Part shown: in pieces, positions 55,901-60,932 of the stretch
How positions within the stretch are numbered: position 1 is the stretch's first letter
Layout of the letters: the number at the start of each line of letters is the position of its first letter
Assembly (NCBI GenBank): GCA_002269645.1
Contig: NIVC01002114.1
Coordinates: 62,001 to 126,000 of the forward strand
Reading direction: 5' to 3'
DNA from: Macrostomum lignano
Taxonomy: Eukaryota
Length of the DNA: 64,000 nt
Notes under the pieces: generated by a model
What the model was told of the DNA's origin: nothing
Databases searched by the model: none
Seen by the model: only the letters and a program-made list of their open reading frames with translations
Translations under genes and position numbers: made by a program

Positions 55901-58900
55901 GACATGCAGTCATTATCTGCGTGAATGGTAACATGATAGTCCAGATTGCTGAGTATCTGATACAGTTGCGGAATGGAGGCGGTGCGTAGCTGAGACTCCA
56001 GCGCAGATGAGCTAACTTTTTTACCTTAAGGACCAGATAGAGAATCTATCTCTAGAAGAGGAGAGGAGAGATGAGGAGAGGAGATTGAGAAGAGGAGATT
56101 GAGGAGAGGAGAGGAGAGGAGAGGAGAGGAGAGGAGAGGATAGGAGAGGAGAGGAGAGGAGAGGTGAGGAGAGGAGAGGAGAGGAGAGGAGAGGAGAGGA
56201 GAGGAGAGGAGAGGAGAGGAGAGGTGAGGAGAGGAGAGGAGAGAAGAGGAGATTGAGGAGAGGAGATTGAGGAGAGGAGAGGGGAGGAGCTTGAGGAGAG
56301 GAGAAGAGATTGAGGAGAGGAGAGGAGAGGAGAGGAGAGGAGAGGAGAGGATAGGAGAGGAGAGGAGAGGAGAGGTGAGGAGAGGAGAGGAGAGGAGAGG
56401 AGAGGAGAGGAGAGGTGAGGAGAGGAGAGGAGAGGAGAGGTGAGGAGAGGAGAGGAGAGAAGAGGAGATTGAGGAGAGGAGATTGAGGAGAGGAGAGGGG
56501 AGGAGCTTGAGGAGAGGAGAAGAGATTGAGGAGAGGAGAGGAGAGGAGAGGAGAGGAGAGGAGAGGTGAGGAGAGGAGAGGAGTGAAGAGGAGATTGAGG
56601 AGAGGAGATTGAGGAGAGGAGAGGGGAGGAGCTTGAGGAGAGGAGAAGAGATTGAGGAGAGGAGAGGAGAGGAGAGGAGAGGAGAGGAGAGGAGAGGAGA
56701 GGAGAGGAGAGGAGAGGAGAGGAGAGGAGAGGAGAGGAGAGGAGAGGAGAGGAGAGGAGAGGAGAGGAGAGGAGAGGAAAGGAGAGGAGAGGAGAGGAGA
56801 GTATACTAGAGAGATTAGAGCTGAGAAGAGACACAAACCCTGAGCGGGCCGGATTGCTATTTTGAAGTTTCAAAGGACCAGAGGGCCTCGGATAGAAAGG
56901 CTTCTGCGGGCCGCATGTTGGCCTAAAGGCTGGATTTTGCCGACCCCTGCTCTATGGCGCCACAATCTAGGGTTCGATTTTGTATCGGCCCGCATTATTC
57001 TACTCGTAGAAGTAATTTTTGCGCTTGTGCACGGGAATTGACAATTGATAGTAGTTTTTCATGAGCGATTGATACCCATTGAGGGTAGTTTGTAAGATGG
57101 GTCTGTCAGAGGAATGGCTATGACTGCTAAGCCTGCTCGCTAAGTAACAAAACATAATTACTCGTTATTTGATTTTTCCACCAAGGCAATATAATTGTGC
57201 TTGCGATAATTGTTTCTTCCAACTGCAGGACACGCGACGACCTTGCCGCTGTCGCCGAAAGGTGGCCAACTACAGTTTTACGACTCGTTGGTGGCTAAAA
57301 ATAGTCTGTCATCTTCGGCTGGCCAAGGCATTGTAAGCTGAGCCTATCCATATAGTTCGTACAATGATGTAGTCTAGAGTTTCATTCACTTTGTTTTAAG
57401 CCGACGACTTGTCAGATGTATCTATTCAATGCAAATTATAGTCACCTACAACTCCGGTTGCAGCCGTTGACTCTGACTAAAAATCGACGCAAGAAGACCA
57501 TCGACATGTTTGAGCTCGACAGCTCAGAGAGGATGCTTAGCGACAGAGAATTCGGTAGGTATTCTATCTATCTATCTATCTATCTATCTATCTATCTATC
57601 TATCTATCTATCTATCTATCTATCTATCTATCTATCTATCTATCTATCTATCTATCTATCTATCTATCTATCTATCTATCTATCTATCTATCTATCTATC
57701 TATCTATCTATCTATCTATCTATCTATCTATCTATCTATCTATCTATCTATCTATCTATCTATCTATCTATCTATCTATCTATCTATCTATCTATCTATC
57801 TATCTATCTATCTATCTATCTATCTATCTATCTATCTATCTATCTATCTATCTATCTATCTATCTATCTATCTATCTATCTATCTATCTATCTATCTATC
57901 TATCTATCTATCTATCTATCTATCTATCTATCTATCTATCTATCTATCTATCTATCTATCTATCTATCTATCTATCTATCTATCTATCTATCTATCTATC
58001 TATCTATCTATCTATCTATCTATCTATCTATCTATCTATCTATCTATCTATCTATCTATCTATCTATCTATCTATCTATCTATCTATCTATCTATCTATC
58101 TATCTATCTATCTATCTATCTATCTATCTATCTATCTATCTATCTATCTATCTATCTATCTATCTATCTATCTATCTATCTATCTATCTATCTATCTATC
58201 TATCTATCTATCTATCTATCTATCTATCTATCTATCTATCTATCTATCTATCTATCTATCTATCTATCTATCTATCTATCTATCTATCTATCTATCTATC
58301 TATCTATCTATCTATCTATCTATCTATCTATCTATCTATCTATCTATCTATCTATCTATCTATCTATCTATCTATCTATCTATCTATCTATCTATCTATC
58401 TATCTATCTATCTATCTATCTATCTATCTGTAGCACGAAAGTAGCACGCACACAAGATCACCGGAAACGATTAAGGCAGCTGGAAAGCCAATGGGCGCGG
58501 TAAGCGCTTTTATCCAGAGGAACTACCTGCTGGAACCAGCCATGCCGAACGAAAATCAGACTACTCAAGTAGTGCAAAAGAGTACGTGCAACTACCGAGA
58601 AATCTAATTTTCGTAACCGCTCCGGTGCAGGTCCTGGCTATAGATAGTAGATAGCCAATCGCTTCGCTCGCTCTTTCTCGCTATCTACTATCTATAGCCA
58701 GGACCTGCACCGGAGCGGTTACGAAAATTAGATTTCTCGGTAGTTGCACGTACTCTTTTGCACTACTTGAGTAGTCTGATTTTCGTTCGGCATGGCTGGT
58801 TCCAGCAGGTAGTTCCTCTGGATAAAAGCGCTTACCGCGCCCATTGGCTTTCCAGCTGCCTTAATCGTTTCCGGTGATCTTGTGTGCGTGCTTTCAGCTT

Positions 58901-60932
58901 GATTGGCTGCGGCAAGAAAGCTCGAAAGAGCTCGCTTCGCTCGCTCTTTCTCGCTATCTACTATCTATAGCCAGGACCTGCACCGGAGCGGTTACGAAAA
59001 TTAGATTTCTCGGTAGTTGCACGTACTCTTTTGCACTACTTGAGTAGTCTGATTTTCGTTCGGCATGGCTGGTTCCAGCAGGTAGTTCCTCTGGATAAAA
59101 GCGCTTACCGCGCCCATTGGCTTTCCAGCTGCCTTAATCGTTTCCGGTGATCTTGTGTGCGTGCTTTCAGCTTGATTGGCTGCGGCAAGAAAGCTCGAAA
59201 GAGCTCGCTTCGCTCGCTCTTTCTCGCTATCTACTATCTATAGCCAGGACCTGCACCGGAGCGGTTACGAAAATTAGATTTCTCGGTAGTTGCACGTACT
59301 CTTTTGCACTACTTGAGTAGTCTGATTTTCGTTCGGCATGGCTGGTTCCAGCAGGTAGTTCCTCTGGATAAAAGCGCTTACCGCGCCCATTGGCTTTCCA
59401 GCTGCCTTAATCGTTTCCGGTGATCTTGTGTGCGTGCTTTCAGCTTGATTGGCTGCGGCAAGAAAGCTCGAAAGAGCTCGCTTCGCTCGCTCTTTCTCGC
59501 TATCTACTATCTATAGCCAGGACCTGCACCGGAGCGGTTACGAAAATTAGATTTCTCGGTAGTTGCACGTACTCTTTTGCACTACTTGAGTAGTCTGATT
59601 TTCGTTCGGCATGGCTGGTTCCAGCAGGTAGTTCCTCTGGATAAAAGCGCTTACCGCGCCCATTGGCTTTCCAGCTGCCTTAATCGTTTCCGGTGATCTT
59701 GTGTGCGTGCTTTCAGCTTGATTGGCTGCGGCAAGAAAGCTCGAAAGAGCTCGCTTCGCTCGCTCTTTCTCGCTATCTACTATCTATAGCCAGGACCTGC
59801 ACCGGAGCGGTTACGAAAATTAGATTTCTCGGTAGTTGCACGTACTCTTTTGCACTACTTGAGTAGTCTGATTTTCGTTCGGCATGGCTGGTTCCAGCAG
59901 GTAGTTCCTCTGGATAAAAGCGCTTACCGCGCCCATTGGCTTTCCAGCTGCCTTAATCGTTTCCGGTGATCTTGTGTGCGTGCTTTCAGCTTGATTGGCT
60001 GCGGCAAGAAAGCTCGAAAGAGCTCGCTTCGCTCGCTCTTTCTCGCTATCTACTATCTATAGCCAGGACCTGCACCGGAGCGGTTACGAAAATTAGATTT
60101 CTCGGTAGTTGCACGTACTCTTTTGCACTACTTGAGTAGTCTGATTTTCGTTCGGCATGGCTGGTTCCAGCAGGTAGTTCCTCTGGATAAAAGCGCTTAC
60201 CGCGCCCATTGGCTTTCCAGCTGCCTTAATCGTTTCCGGTGATCTTGTGTGCGTGCTTTCAGCTTGATTGGCTGCGGCAAGAAAGCTCGAAAGAGCTCGC
60301 TTCGCTCGCTCTTTCTCGCTATCTACTATCTATCTATCTATCTATCTATCTATCTATCTATCTATCTATCTATCTATCTATCTATCTATCTATCTATCTA
60401 TCTATCTATCTATCTATCTATCTATCTATCTATCTATCTATCTATCTATCTATCTATCTATCTATCTATCTATCTATCTATCTATCTATCTATCTATCTA
60501 TCTATCTATCTATCTATCTATCTATCTATCTATCTATCTATCTATCTATCTATCTATCTATTTAATCAAGGTCGCCAATCAGCGATGGCCTTCAATACCA
60601 GACCGGAGGCATTCCACTCGGAGACGGACCTTTCCGCAGCTGCTGCTGCTGCACTCGGTACGCAGGCTGGATCCCAGCGTCGCACTGGTGCTCCAGCTCG
60701 TTGCGAGGACAACTACAACGGTGCTGGCAACCTTCAGCATCAGCACTACACAGCGGGCCCTATAGTGTCCTACACTCCTCTATGCGGCACCTCCGCTGCG
60801 GCAGAAAATTTGGCCACCAAACCGGACTCCAATAGGCGGCACTACGTGGTGTCCTCGTCCACGGTTGCCGTCGTCTCGCCGCCAGCTAATAAGCGTTTGA
60901 AAGCGCCGTACGACAATATTAGTGATGTCTAA
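49962..60932 (+). CDS. Protocadherin (7 EC repeats, delta-like architecture), about 1113 aa; exons 49962-50198, 50846-51084, 52207-52855, 53185-54264, 54533-55112, 57229-57332, 57464-57554, 60571-60932
   Basis: Signal peptide, Cys-containing EC1, six DxNDxxP linkers plus LDRE and AxDxD motifs, a seventh membrane-proximal EC, a TM helix (LLIVLLAAGLAVLLLLVLFLLAV) and a cytoplasmic tail ending SDV. All seven introns are GT-AG with consistent phases (0,2,0,0,1,0,1). Exons 6-8 rest on splice signals and phase only, so they are less certain. Confidence 0.9.
50388..50700 (+). mobile_element. tRNA-derived SINE with a CORE-like central domain, in protocadherin intron 1
   Basis: A box (GCCTAGTGGTTAGAGC), B box (GGTTCGATTCC), then TGTGTCCTTGAGCAAGACACTTAAC...CAGTT...CTGTAAAATGGG resembling the MIR/CORE domain; (TTA)n tail ending at 50700. 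Confidence 0.85.
56005..56949. mobile_element. Possible hAT/Charlie-like non-autonomous element split by the GAGAG array
   Basis: Right end TTGCCGACCCCTG (56937-56949) with GCGGGCCG subterminal motifs. The left segment AACTTTTTTACCTTAAGGACCAGATAG resembles Charlie-type left ends, but the left TIR and TSD are not clear. Confidence 0.4.
56057..56801. repeat. (GAGAG)n pentanucleotide satellite with higher-order variant blocks
   Basis: Seen directly in protocadherin intron 5. Confidence 0.97.
57564..58429. repeat. Perfect (TATC)n microsatellite, about 865 bp
   Basis: Starts 9 nt after the GTAGGT donor at 57555. Confidence 0.99.
58443..60332. repeat. Palindrome plus tandem array of a 273-bp Helitron-like unit (one inverted 213-bp arm and six direct copies)
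   Basis: 58443-58655 is the exact reverse complement of 58680-58892 (24-nt spacer). Direct copies start at 58680 + 273n, and a seventh starts at 60318 and runs into TATC. Confidence 0.95.
60327..60561. repeat. (TATC)n microsatellite ending about 9 nt before the exon 8 acceptor
   Basis: Seen directly. Confidence 0.99.

What the first reader, a model, noticed from the sequence alone, without database searches (positions are those of the whole stretch)
57555..60570. A 3-kb protocadherin intron made almost entirely of a palindrome, six tandem 273-bp units and two TATC arrays
Seen: donor GTAGGT, (TATC)n 57564-58429, an inverted 213-bp arm, a 24-nt spacer, six identical head-to-tail 273-bp units, (TATC)n 60327-60561, then TTTAATCAAG acceptor. 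Only about 10 nt of unique sequence lies at each splice site. The left junction carries a short templated duplication (TAGCACGAAAG-TAGCACG). Inference: an inverted copy at the head of a direct array suggests fold-back template switching followed by rolling-circle-type amplification. The pre-mRNA would contain a 213-bp perfect duplex (potential ADAR/Dicer substrate) that could affect inclusion of the PDZ-motif exon.
Basis: partly seen in the sequence, partly recalled or inferred. Interest (0 to 1): 0.7.

Follow-up and report, generated by a model that had tools for sequence, protein, structure and literature searches.

The report
Mobile satellite inserted in microsatellite intron
This flatworm protocadherin intron was originally nothing but a (TATC)n microsatellite, and a copy of an abundant, apparently mobile 273-bp tandem-repeat family recently inserted into it with a fold-back at its head, which gives a clean natural example of how satellite-like repeats spread rather than a new kind of system.

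Summary

The interpretation needs revising. The genome is Macrostomum lignano Mlig_3_7, a neopolyploid. Three other copies of this gene have the same intron made only of GTAGGTATTC-(TATC)n-TATTTAATCAAG (n≈43, ~250, 267), so the microsatellite intron is ancestral and about 1.9 kb was inserted here.

The 273-bp unit belongs to a dispersed family: at least 1,183 unit junctions and at least 286 arrays, nearly all inside (TATC)n. The 3' end is constant and the 5' ends are scattered. None of about 30 other arrays has an inverted arm.

The insertion sits exactly on the one ancestral TATA interruption of the tract. A non-microsatellite insertion elsewhere shares the same target 11-mer, TCTATATATCT.

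All six window units carry a variant found in under 1% of units, so they derive from one progenitor unit.

Best reading: a polar, probably RNA-mediated (TPRT-like) insertion of a non-autonomous tandem-repeat element. The copying strand ran off at unit position 1, snapped back and copied 221 nt of itself. Fold-back is supported. In-situ rolling-circle origin of the array is not.

The parts
57464..57554 (+). Predicted exon 7 of a protocadherin-type gene (…PLTLTKNRRKKTIDMFELDSSERMLSDREF-G), ending in phase 1
   Evidence: ORF and AG/GT signals. Six cadherin domains plus Cadherin_2 upstream. The ORF is conserved in paralogous copies. The exon start is inferred from the AG at 57462-57463.
57555..60570 (+). 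Intron (3,016 nt); donor GTAGGTATTC, acceptor TATTTAATCAAG
   Evidence: The same donor and acceptor sequences bracket pure (TATC)n introns of 190, 1,019 and 1,090 nt in three other gene copies.
57565..58428 (+). Left part of the ancestral microsatellite, (TATC)216, perfect
   Evidence: It has the same length as the stretch before the TATA landmark in the C2255 copy ((TATC)215 + TATA).
58429..58442 (+). Outer (5') junction of the insertion: filler with a templated 7-nt duplication (TAGCACG) and short matches to the next bases of the unit (CTG, GAAAG)
   Evidence: Read directly from the sequence. Comparable filler (AATAGACAAC) sits at the 5' junction of L043.
58443..58655 (-). Inverted arm: reverse complement of unit positions 22-234 (213 nt, 100%)
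   Evidence: The junction to the direct array is unique in the 764-Mb assembly.
58656..58679 (+). Loop of the palindrome: CAA (3 nt not matching the unit) plus unit positions 1-21
58659..60333 (+). Direct array: six identical 273-bp units (58659-60296) plus unit positions 1-37. All six carry the rare A at unit position 259.
   Evidence: The A259 junction occurs 8 times in the genome (6 here), against 1,183 for the consensus C.
60327..60558 (+). Right (TATC)58 tract: the remainder of the ancestral microsatellite (51 repeats in C2255) plus about 7 repeats from tail, target duplication or slippage
60571..60932 (+). Predicted last coding exon (G-RQSAMAFN…APYDNISDV*), ending in a class-I PDZ-ligand-like S-D-V
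   Evidence: The tail finds no homologues in the large protein collection.

Best explanation
The intron was originally a pure (TATC)n microsatellite with about 10 nt of unique sequence at each splice site. Into it, exactly at its one TATA interruption, went a copy of an abundant, non-coding, non-autonomous mobile element of Macrostomum lignano. That element consists of tandem 273-bp units ending in ...CTCGCTATCTACTATCTAT, which runs into (TATC)n. Shown: the insertion itself, through empty sites in sister copies; the family's size; its near-universal residence in (TATC)n; its constant 3' end with scattered 5' ends; filler or microhomology at 5' junctions; and the clonality of the six units. Inferred: copying is polar. 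It is primed where the element's TATC-like 3' end pairs with a nicked TATC/TCTATATATCT target, and it proceeds towards the element's 5' end. This is most simply target-primed reverse transcription of an RNA by a LINE enzyme supplied in trans. At this locus the nascent strand ran off its template at unit position 1, gained 3 nt, snapped back on itself 24 nt away, and copied 221 nt of its own sequence, which became the inverted arm. The end was then sealed to the upstream microsatellite by error-prone end joining with templated filler. The six units descend from one unit, either by template re-use during insertion or by unequal exchange afterwards. The insertion is very young: there are no differences among the units and the arm, a 213-bp perfect palindrome is still intact, and the insertion is absent from a sister copy that is 99.9% identical upstream.
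For: Empty sites: C2255, C737 and C841 carry the same exon flanks with introns made only of (TATC)n. Window versus C2255: 2 mismatches in 1,885 nt upstream; left tracts of equal length; the insertion begins at offset 875, directly after the position of C2255's only interruption (TATA, 871-874). That TATA is ancestral, because C737 has it at the same distance from the acceptor (213 versus 216 nt). Family: 1,183 exact consensus unit junctions and 286 identical 3' ends fused to (TATC)n. Only 7 arrays have a 5' end flush at position 1 and only 5 at the unit's own TATC motif. In about 32 arrays read directly, the 5' ends lie at positions 1, 23, 56, 69, 71, 96, 106, 113, 159, 163, 175, 198-206, 219 and 238, with 2-4 nt of microhomology or filler. 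Flanks beyond the microsatellites are unrelated between loci. A true insertion outside a microsatellite: at L043 the filled and empty sites differ only by the element, with a 5-nt TATCT overlap and a 10-nt filler, and the target contains the same 11-mer TCTATATATCT as the window's target. L041 has a ~362-bp target duplication. There is no ORF above 78 aa in the unit and no tRNA, 5S or 7SL match. 5' truncation, microhomology, extra nucleotides, occasional 5' inversion and both short and long target duplications are the described signatures of LINE-type insertion (PMC4245944, PMC2837659). A VNTR-only retroposon (SVA2) has precedent (PMC3287187). Non-LTR elements that home to microsatellites are known (PMC4640811). 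Clonality: A259 is in all six units but in only 2 of about 1,190 other units.
Against: No reverse transcriptase partner, transcript or spliced-marker evidence was obtained, so an RNA intermediate is inferred only from junction anatomy and polarity. Target duplications cannot be seen inside microsatellites. The two readable cases give an ambiguous 5 nt and an atypically long ~362 bp. Only 1 of about 32 arrays has an inversion. The shared target 11-mer rests on two sites. The 3' stem-loop (GAAAGAGC/GCUCUUUC, just before the TATC-like end) is not more stable than shuffled sequence (z = -1.2). No source array made of A259 units exists in the assembly, so a simple copy of a six-unit source does not explain the array. 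The assembly is known to contain chimeric scaffolds (PMC10733133), and no reads were checked.
Confidence: 0.68

Rival explanations
1. DNA-level insertion without RNA. A break or stalled fork in the long (TATC)n tract was repaired by microhomology-mediated template switching (MMBIR/SDSA-like) into another (TATC)n-flanked array, or by capture of extrachromosomal circular satellite DNA. The inverted arm and templated filler would be template-switch scars.
For: Templated filler and an inverted segment are classic replication or repair template-switch scars (window junctions). L041 looks like a ~362-bp tandem duplication with the array at its joint. Divergence between the window and C2255 jumps across the intron (2/1,885 upstream versus 9/553 downstream, p = 5e-5), as if a recombination or repair tract ended there. 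Arrays flanked on both sides by the same microsatellite offer ample homology.
Against: Because arrays have (TATC)n on both sides, invasion should start from either side equally often and give 3'-truncated as well as 5'-truncated arrays. Observed: at least 286 identical 3' junctions and none truncated among about 32 arrays read. Circle integration or in-array microsatellite expansion predicts as many 5' ends at unit position ~38 as 3' ends at 37; observed 5 versus 286. The shared non-homologous target 11-mer TCTATATATCT suggests an enzyme's nick site rather than random breakage.
Confidence: 0.2
2. One reading: the array was created on the spot. An inverted copy arose by fold-back and primed rolling-circle-type amplification that produced the six units within this intron.
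For: All six units share a variant that is otherwise almost absent. The palindrome has a hairpin-like geometry with a 24-nt loop.
Against: The unit is not local: it occurs more than 1,183 times at over 99% identity on hundreds of contigs. Arrays of 1 to 27 or more units are the family norm and lack inverted arms. The array's 3' boundary (unit position 37 running into TATC) is the family-wide boundary, so the array arrived by the family's usual route. The flanking TATC arrays are ancestral, not products of the event.
Confidence: 0.04
3. Assembly artefact: a chimeric or palindromic PacBio read, or a mis-join through the microsatellites, placed a foreign array and a spurious inverted arm in this intron.
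For: Mlig_3_7 was built from early PacBio data with Canu. 36% of its length lies in chimeric scaffolds, and 4-copy blocks often include wrongly duplicated paralogues (PMC5730564, PMC10733133). Kilobase-long pure microsatellites are natural mis-join points. The inverted junction and the A259 array occur nowhere else.
Against: A missed-adapter palindrome would be symmetric and would continue inverted into (GATA)n. Here the arm stops after 213-221 nt and is joined, through filler, to (TATC)n in the direct orientation, and the loop is asymmetric. A mis-join inside the left tract would give it an arbitrary length, yet the insert starts within 1 nt of the ancestral TATA landmark (about 1 chance in 130) and the tract totals match (274 versus 267 repeats). 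Both flanks belong to the same gene, in frame.
Confidence: 0.07
4. A Helitron/Helentron-type non-autonomous element (HINE, 'pearl'-like) carrying satellite-like central repeats and a microsatellite.
For: HINEs combine a tetranucleotide microsatellite with short arrays of satellite-like repeats, are dispersed in genes and introns, and create no target duplications (PMC7492417).
Against: HINEs have conserved left and right flanks with subterminal inverted repeats and a 3' palindrome. Here nothing beyond the unit and the microsatellite is shared between loci. The microsatellite is the pre-existing target, not part of the element. The 5' ends are scattered. L043 is not inserted at an A|T or T|T site.
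Confidence: 0.02

Closest known systems
SVA / SVA2 (VNTR-bearing non-autonomous retroposons mobilised by LINE-1)
   Same: Non-coding. [quoted passage not shown] The 3' end is constant with a simple-repeat tail. There are 5'-truncated copies, occasional inversions, and insertions into genes. SVA2 is essentially VNTR only (PMC3287187).
   Different: The tail and target here are (TATC)n rather than poly(A) and TTTT/AA. The repeat unit is 273 bp, not 36-51 bp. No partner LINE has been identified. The host is a flatworm. Target duplications are not demonstrably 4-20 bp.
Microsatellite-specific non-LTR retrotransposons (R4/Dong, Togen, some HERO, Waldo/Mino/Kibi/Koshi)
   Same: They home to a particular microsatellite, and the insertions split a pre-existing tract (PMC4640811; Kojima & Fujiwara 2004 as cited there).
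   Different: Those elements encode their own reverse transcriptase and endonuclease. This element has no ORF above 78 aa and would have to borrow the machinery. I know of no (TATC)n-specific lineage, and none turned up in the papers I read.
5' inversion of LINE-1 inserts (twin priming)
   Same: An inverted segment sits at the 5' end of an otherwise direct, 3'-intact insert, with little or no microhomology at the inner junction (PMC2837659, PMC4245944).
   Different: In twin priming the phase of the inverted piece is arbitrary. Here it mirrors the start of the direct array with only a 24-nt loop. For a 273-bp repeat that is expected in only about 10% of twin-priming events, but it is the rule for snap-back self-priming.
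HINE / pearl / DTC84 / Cg170 elements of bivalves and DINE-1 of Drosophila
   Same: Short satellite-like arrays associated with a tetranucleotide microsatellite and dispersed through genes (PMC7492417).
   Different: No conserved flanking modules, subTIRs or 3' palindrome. The microsatellite lies on both sides and predates the insertion.
Euchromatic spread of Drosophila 1.688/Rsp-like satellites via circles and microhomology
   Same: Satellite units appear at many new euchromatic sites, often inside other repeats, with microhomology at the junctions.
   Different: That process is not reported to be polar. Here 3' ends are invariant and 5' ends scattered.

Membership tests
TPRT-mobilised non-autonomous retroposon (SVA/SINE-like in mechanism) | Constant 3' end followed by a simple-repeat tail | tested here: met
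   286 exact 3' ends ...CTCTTTCTCGCTATCTACTATCTAT fused to (CTAT)n. About 30 of 32 arrays read end at unit position 37 and two at positions 32-35. Only 8 tail-less ends exist.
TPRT-mobilised non-autonomous retroposon (SVA/SINE-like in mechanism) | Variable 5' truncation, with microhomology or extra nucleotides at the 5' junction | tested here: met
   5' ends lie at more than 15 different unit positions. Only 7 of about 286 are flush at position 1. There is 2-4 nt of microhomology, or filler (L043: 10 nt; window: 13 nt).
TPRT-mobilised non-autonomous retroposon (SVA/SINE-like in mechanism) | Target-site duplications of characteristic length | tested here: inconclusive
   They are invisible inside (TATC)n. 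L043 shows a 5-nt TATCT that could be either a duplication or microhomology. L041 shows a ~362-bp duplication.
TPRT-mobilised non-autonomous retroposon (SVA/SINE-like in mechanism) | An autonomous LINE partner (shared 3' end or tail), and an RNA intermediate | not tested
Canonical SINE | Pol III head derived from tRNA, 5S or 7SL RNA | tested here: not met
   No Rfam match at E<=1 and no tRNA in the unit.
HINE / Helentron non-autonomous element | Conserved left and right flanks with subterminal inverted repeats and a 3' palindrome around the repeat array | tested here: not met
   An all-against-all comparison of masked flanks from 21 loci finds nothing shared except two near-identical locus pairs. 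Definition taken from PMC7492417.
Foldback-type transposon (long inverted termini made of tandem repeats) | Inverted repeat arrays at both ends as a family trait | tested here: not met
   An inverted arm is present at 1 of about 32 arrays, and its junction is unique in the genome.
Classical satellite DNA | Long homogeneous arrays at a few heterochromatic sites, spread by unequal exchange | tested here: not met
   There are at least 286 separate short arrays (mean about 4 units, range 1 to 27 or more) in unique contexts, including an intron.
Spliceosomal intron | GT...AG borders with the reading frame restored by removal, and conservation of the flanking exons | tested here: met
   GTAGGT...AAG borders in phase 1. 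The exon 7+8 ORF is intact in the window, C2255 and C841 despite introns of 3,016, 1,090 and 190 nt, each 1 mod 3. Transcript evidence was not available.

The most novel reading that the evidence does not exclude
The 273-bp family is a retroposon that manufactures its own satellite arrays. Each complete unit-length element has the same 37 nt at both ends (unit positions 1-37). A reverse transcriptase reaching the 5' end could therefore jump back to the 3' copy, as in retroviral strong-stop transfer, and lay down n identical units from a single-unit template. That would explain arrays of n + 0.14 units, the clonal A259 array with no six-unit source in the genome, and the run-off/snap-back at unit position 1. 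The same machinery would nick a defined site (TCTATA|TATCT), so the family homes to (TATC)n tracts. If so, this is a direct and experimentally tractable link between retrotransposition and the birth of satellite arrays, in an animal that can be made transgenic and whose triplicated genome supplies built-in empty sites.
Probability: 0.15. Interest if true: 0.75.

Novelty: new variant of a known kind. Interest (0 to 1): 0.45.

Why it matters
How satellite-like tandem repeats leave their arrays and seed new ones across euchromatin is still debated; candidates include transposon carriage, circles, repair and retroposition. This family offers unusually clean material:

- hundreds of near-identical, recently inserted arrays;
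- a strict 3'/5' polarity;
- a preferred microsatellite target, with a candidate nick motif;
- a neopolyploid genome in which sister copies act as internal empty sites.

For the gene itself, the locus shows that an intron can consist almost entirely of a microsatellite, vary 16-fold in length between copies, and still flank an intact reading frame. One copy now places a 213-bp perfect duplex in its pre-mRNA. That could be used to ask whether long intronic hairpins affect splicing, editing or small-RNA production in a flatworm.

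Tried and rejected
1. SINE origin: an Rfam scan (E<=1) and a tRNA scan of the unit found nothing.
2. Confirming the exon 7/8 junction through homologues: the cytoplasmic tail has no relatives at E<=0.001. I used ORF conservation among the four genomic copies instead.
3. A larger parent element around the arrays (LINE body or HINE flanks): masked flanks of 21 loci share nothing.
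4. 'Arrays split by microsatellite expansion inside a unit' was rejected: 286 junctions at position 37 against 5 at position 38.
5. Symmetric recombination or gene conversion through the flanking microsatellites was rejected as the main route, because of the polarity.
6. A missed-adapter palindromic read was rejected on geometry.
7. A 3' stem-loop as a recognition signal: an 8-bp stem is predicted, but it is not better than shuffles and the near-identical copies allow no covariation test.
9. L035 and L033 could not be used for empty-site comparison, because long compound microsatellites leave no usable unique flanks.
10. The neighbouring 183-bp satellite is unrelated to the 273-bp unit.
11. 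The two other A259-bearing copies (C31, C1948) are short, older copies and not an obvious source.

Full report
**Observation.** Reading 57300-60800, Tandem Repeats Finder and the repeat finder confirm the description at base level. In order, the intron contains:
- donor GTAGGTATTC;
- 216 perfect TATC repeats (57565-58428);
- a 13-14-nt junction with TAGCACG present twice;
- a 213-nt arm (58443-58655) that is the exact reverse complement of unit positions 22-234;
- 24 nt between the arms (CAA plus unit positions 1-21);
- six identical 273-bp units (58659-60296) plus 37 nt;
- 58 perfect TATC repeats (60327-60558);
- acceptor TATTTAATCAAG.

As RNA the palindrome folds at -446 kcal/mol, against -139 for shuffles.

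**Organism and gene.**
- The window is contig C2114 of a 764,410,778-bp assembly in 5,269 contigs.
- The best named relatives of the encoded protein are Macrostomum lignano cadherins.
- The assembly statistics match Mlig_3_7: 764.4 Mb and 5,270 scaffolds, built with Canu from PacBio, Illumina and 454 data of the DV1 line (PMC5730564). PMC10733133 gives 5,269 scaffolds.
- That genome is neopolyploid, with three subgenomes about 2% apart. Many assembly blocks are duplicated and 36% of its length lies in chimeric scaffolds (PMC10733133).
- The gene has six cadherin domains, an N-terminal Cadherin_2 domain and a transmembrane segment.
- The exon 7/8 junction keeps the frame (phase 1). The tail ends ...NISDV*.
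- The tail has no detectable homologues.

**The intron is ancestrally a pure microsatellite.**
- The exon flanks occur on three more contigs. In all three the intron is GTAGGTATTC-(TATC)n-TATTTAATCAAG and nothing else: 190 nt (C841), 1,019 nt (C737) and 1,090 nt (C2255).
- The exon 7+8 reading frame is intact in the window, C2255 and C841. It is frameshifted in C737.
- So the two TATC arrays in the window are one old tract split by an insertion of about 1.9 kb.
- The window has 216 + 58 = 274 repeats. C2255 has 215 + TATA + 51 = 267.

**The insertion point.**
- C2255 is nearly identical to the window upstream (2 mismatches in 1,885 nt). Its only imperfection, TATA at intron offset 871-874, directly abuts the insertion start in the window (offset 875).
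- C737 has a TATA at the same distance from the acceptor (213 versus 216 nt). The landmark is therefore ancestral, not a consensus error.
- The insertion landed on the only AT-only heptamer (TATATAT) in the tract.
- Divergence between the window and C2255 is 0.1% upstream but about 1.6% downstream (p = 5e-5). This could reflect recombination between homeologues in the microsatellite or assembly switching there.

**The 273-bp unit is a dispersed family.** A search of the genome found it on dozens of contigs at 99-100% identity, in arrays of 1 to 27 or more units. Exact-pattern counts:

| Feature counted | Count |
|---|---|
| Consensus unit-to-unit junctions | 1,183 |
| Array 3' ends fused to (TATC)n | 286 |
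| Tail-less 3' ends | 8 |
| 5' ends flush at unit position 1 | 7 |
| 5' ends at the unit's own TATC-like motif (position ~38) | 5 |

- In about 32 arrays read directly, the 3' end is at unit position 37 (twice at 32-35). The 5' end is anywhere: positions 1, 23, 56, 69, 71, 96, 106, 113, 159, 163, 175, 198-206, 219 and 238. It is joined to (TATC)n or unique DNA through 2-4 nt of microhomology or filler.
- Flanks beyond the microsatellites are unrelated between loci.
- None of these arrays has an inverted arm, and the window's inverted junction is unique in the genome.
- The unit has no ORF above 78 aa and no tRNA, 5S or 7SL similarity.

**Insertions outside microsatellites.**
- L043 (C291) has a paralogous empty site (C3248). 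The empty site reads ...GTCTATATATCT|GTGACAAG.... The filled site reads ...TATATCT + AATAGACAAC + unit from position ~167 ... CTACTATCT + GTGACAAG....
- That means no target loss, a 5-nt TATCT overlap with the element's 3' end, and filler at the 5' junction.
- Its target contains the same 11-mer, TCTATATATCT, as the window's target. The element's 3' end contains no TATATAT. This looks like a site preference, though it rests on two sites.
- L041 (C376) carries a 3.1-unit array between two copies of a ~362-bp host segment. That is either a very long target duplication or a tandem duplication with the array at its joint. Its 3' junction lies at GTCTATT|TAAT.

**What the polarity excludes.**
- If arrays were simply split by microsatellite expansion inside a unit, or integrated as circles through the TATC motif, 5' ends at position ~38 would equal 3' ends at position 37. 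They do not (5 versus 286).
- Both sides of almost every array are (TATC)n. Homology-driven copying should therefore start from either side and leave 3'-truncated arrays. None was seen.
- HINE/Helentron membership fails on its defining flanks (PMC7492417).

**What the polarity favours.**
- The combination seen here is a constant 3' end with a short-repeat tail, random 5' truncation, microhomology or extra nucleotides at the 5' junction, an occasional 5' inversion, and both short and long target duplications. This is the described signature of target-primed reverse transcription (PMC4245944, PMC2837659, PMC3287187).
- Microsatellite-homing non-LTR elements are known (PMC4640811), and a VNTR-only retroposon (SVA2) has precedent (PMC3287187).
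- I therefore favour an RNA-mediated, trans-mobilised element. No partner enzyme or transcript was examined.

**The inverted arm.**
- On the bottom strand the sequence reads: complement of unit 21 to 1, then TTG, then plus-sense unit 22 to 242.
- That is what a nascent strand produces if it copies leftwards to unit position 1, adds three nucleotides, folds back and copies itself.
- The loop is only 24 nt. For twin priming on a 273-bp periodic template such near-symmetry would be expected in only about 10% of events, so snap-back is the better fit.
- The outer junction, CTG[TAGCACG]AAAG[TAG]CACGCAC, shows templated filler typical of error-prone end joining or template switching.
- Long perfect palindromes are unstable in many organisms (general knowledge), which again suggests the event is recent.

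**The six units.**
- All six carry A at unit position 259, where the family has C.
- The A-bearing junction occurs 8 times in the genome: six here and two in short older copies. The C form occurs 1,183 times.
- The six units therefore descend from one unit. No six-unit A259 source exists in the assembly.
- They were multiplied either during insertion (template re-use; the 37-nt terminal redundancy of the element would allow it) or afterwards by unequal exchange. This is unresolved.
- It does not require the inverted arm, since other arrays lack one.

**Artefact?** I put an artefact at about 7%.
- A missed-adapter palindromic read would be symmetric and would continue inverted into (GATA)n. Here the arm ends after about 220 nt and joins (TATC)n in direct orientation, with an asymmetric loop.
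- A mis-join through the microsatellites would give the left tract an arbitrary length. Instead the insert starts within 1 nt of the ancestral landmark.
- Read-level confirmation is still needed.

**Consequences for the gene.** These are untested. The insertion-bearing copy keeps its splice sites and an intact ORF. Its pre-mRNA would contain a 213-bp perfect duplex.

**Verdict.** The structure is real, the intron is real, and fold-back explains the arm. But the intron is best described as an ancestral microsatellite intron hit by a young insertion from a large, previously undescribed (in the literature I could search) mobile tandem-repeat family with retroposon-like hallmarks. It was not created by a local fold-back plus rolling-circle process.

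Noticed in passing
window 37544-47041: A 9.5-kb array of a 183-bp unit (51.9 copies, 99% matches) ends 2.9 kb upstream of the protocadherin start codon. It is unrelated to the 273-bp unit and is not flanked by microsatellites.
   Followed up: partly
window 3026-3516: A second long (TATC)~123 tract, imperfect, with no 273-bp unit in it. It is a potential unoccupied target of the family.
   Followed up: no
window 60950-61283 and paralogous loci L057/L058: The ~80 nt after 60950 belong to a dispersed repeat with at least 40 copies at 83-92% identity, followed by a 127-bp x1.9 CT-rich repeat. The other gene copies have a ~197-bp indel exactly at 60949/60950.
   Followed up: partly
window 55660-61170 versus C2255, C737, C841: The four gene copies are mosaics. 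Upstream of the intron the window, C2255 and C737 are about 99.9% alike and C841 is about 88-96%. Downstream the window, C2255 and C841 are 99.2-99.5% alike and C737 is degenerate. Possible causes are recombination or gene conversion in the microsatellite, or assembly switching.
   Followed up: partly
L041 (G000:C376:137000-142300), about 1657-3229: A 3.1-unit array lies between two copies of a ~362-bp host segment, which is an unusually long target duplication or a tandem duplication with an inserted array.
   Followed up: partly
G000:C73:306945-309627: Two arrays of the family lie in opposite orientation, tail to tail, about 2 kb apart. This implies (TATC)n facing (GATA)n between them.
   Followed up: no
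L039 (G000:C986:77200-82500): Variant units in which unit positions 136-200 are replaced by an unrelated ~124-nt segment, repeated at least twice. This may be a related subfamily.
   Followed up: no
L034 (G000:C2198:3100-8400), 2221-2491: An array is interrupted by about 269 nt of foreign sequence between unit positions 220 and 238.
   Followed up: no
G000:C841:304251-304640: A second copy of exon 8, identical over 379 nt, lies 10.5 kb from the first on the same contig, with no exon 7 next to it.
   Followed up: no
genome-wide: Of the 8 array 3' ends that lack a TATC tail, 7 are followed by G (…CTACTATCT|G). This may be part of the target motif. The DNA could not be fetched.
   Followed up: no
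window 58845-58849 and 58905-58909, repeated in each unit: Each unit carries two ATTGG (inverted CCAAT, NF-Y-like) motifs, about 85 and 25 nt upstream of position 1 of the next unit. They may act as a promoter that drives the downstream neighbour in an array. This is speculative.
   Followed up: no
window 56057-56801: The preceding intron contains about 750 bp of (AGAGG)n. The window as a whole holds more than 20 separate tandem-repeat arrays.
   Followed up: no
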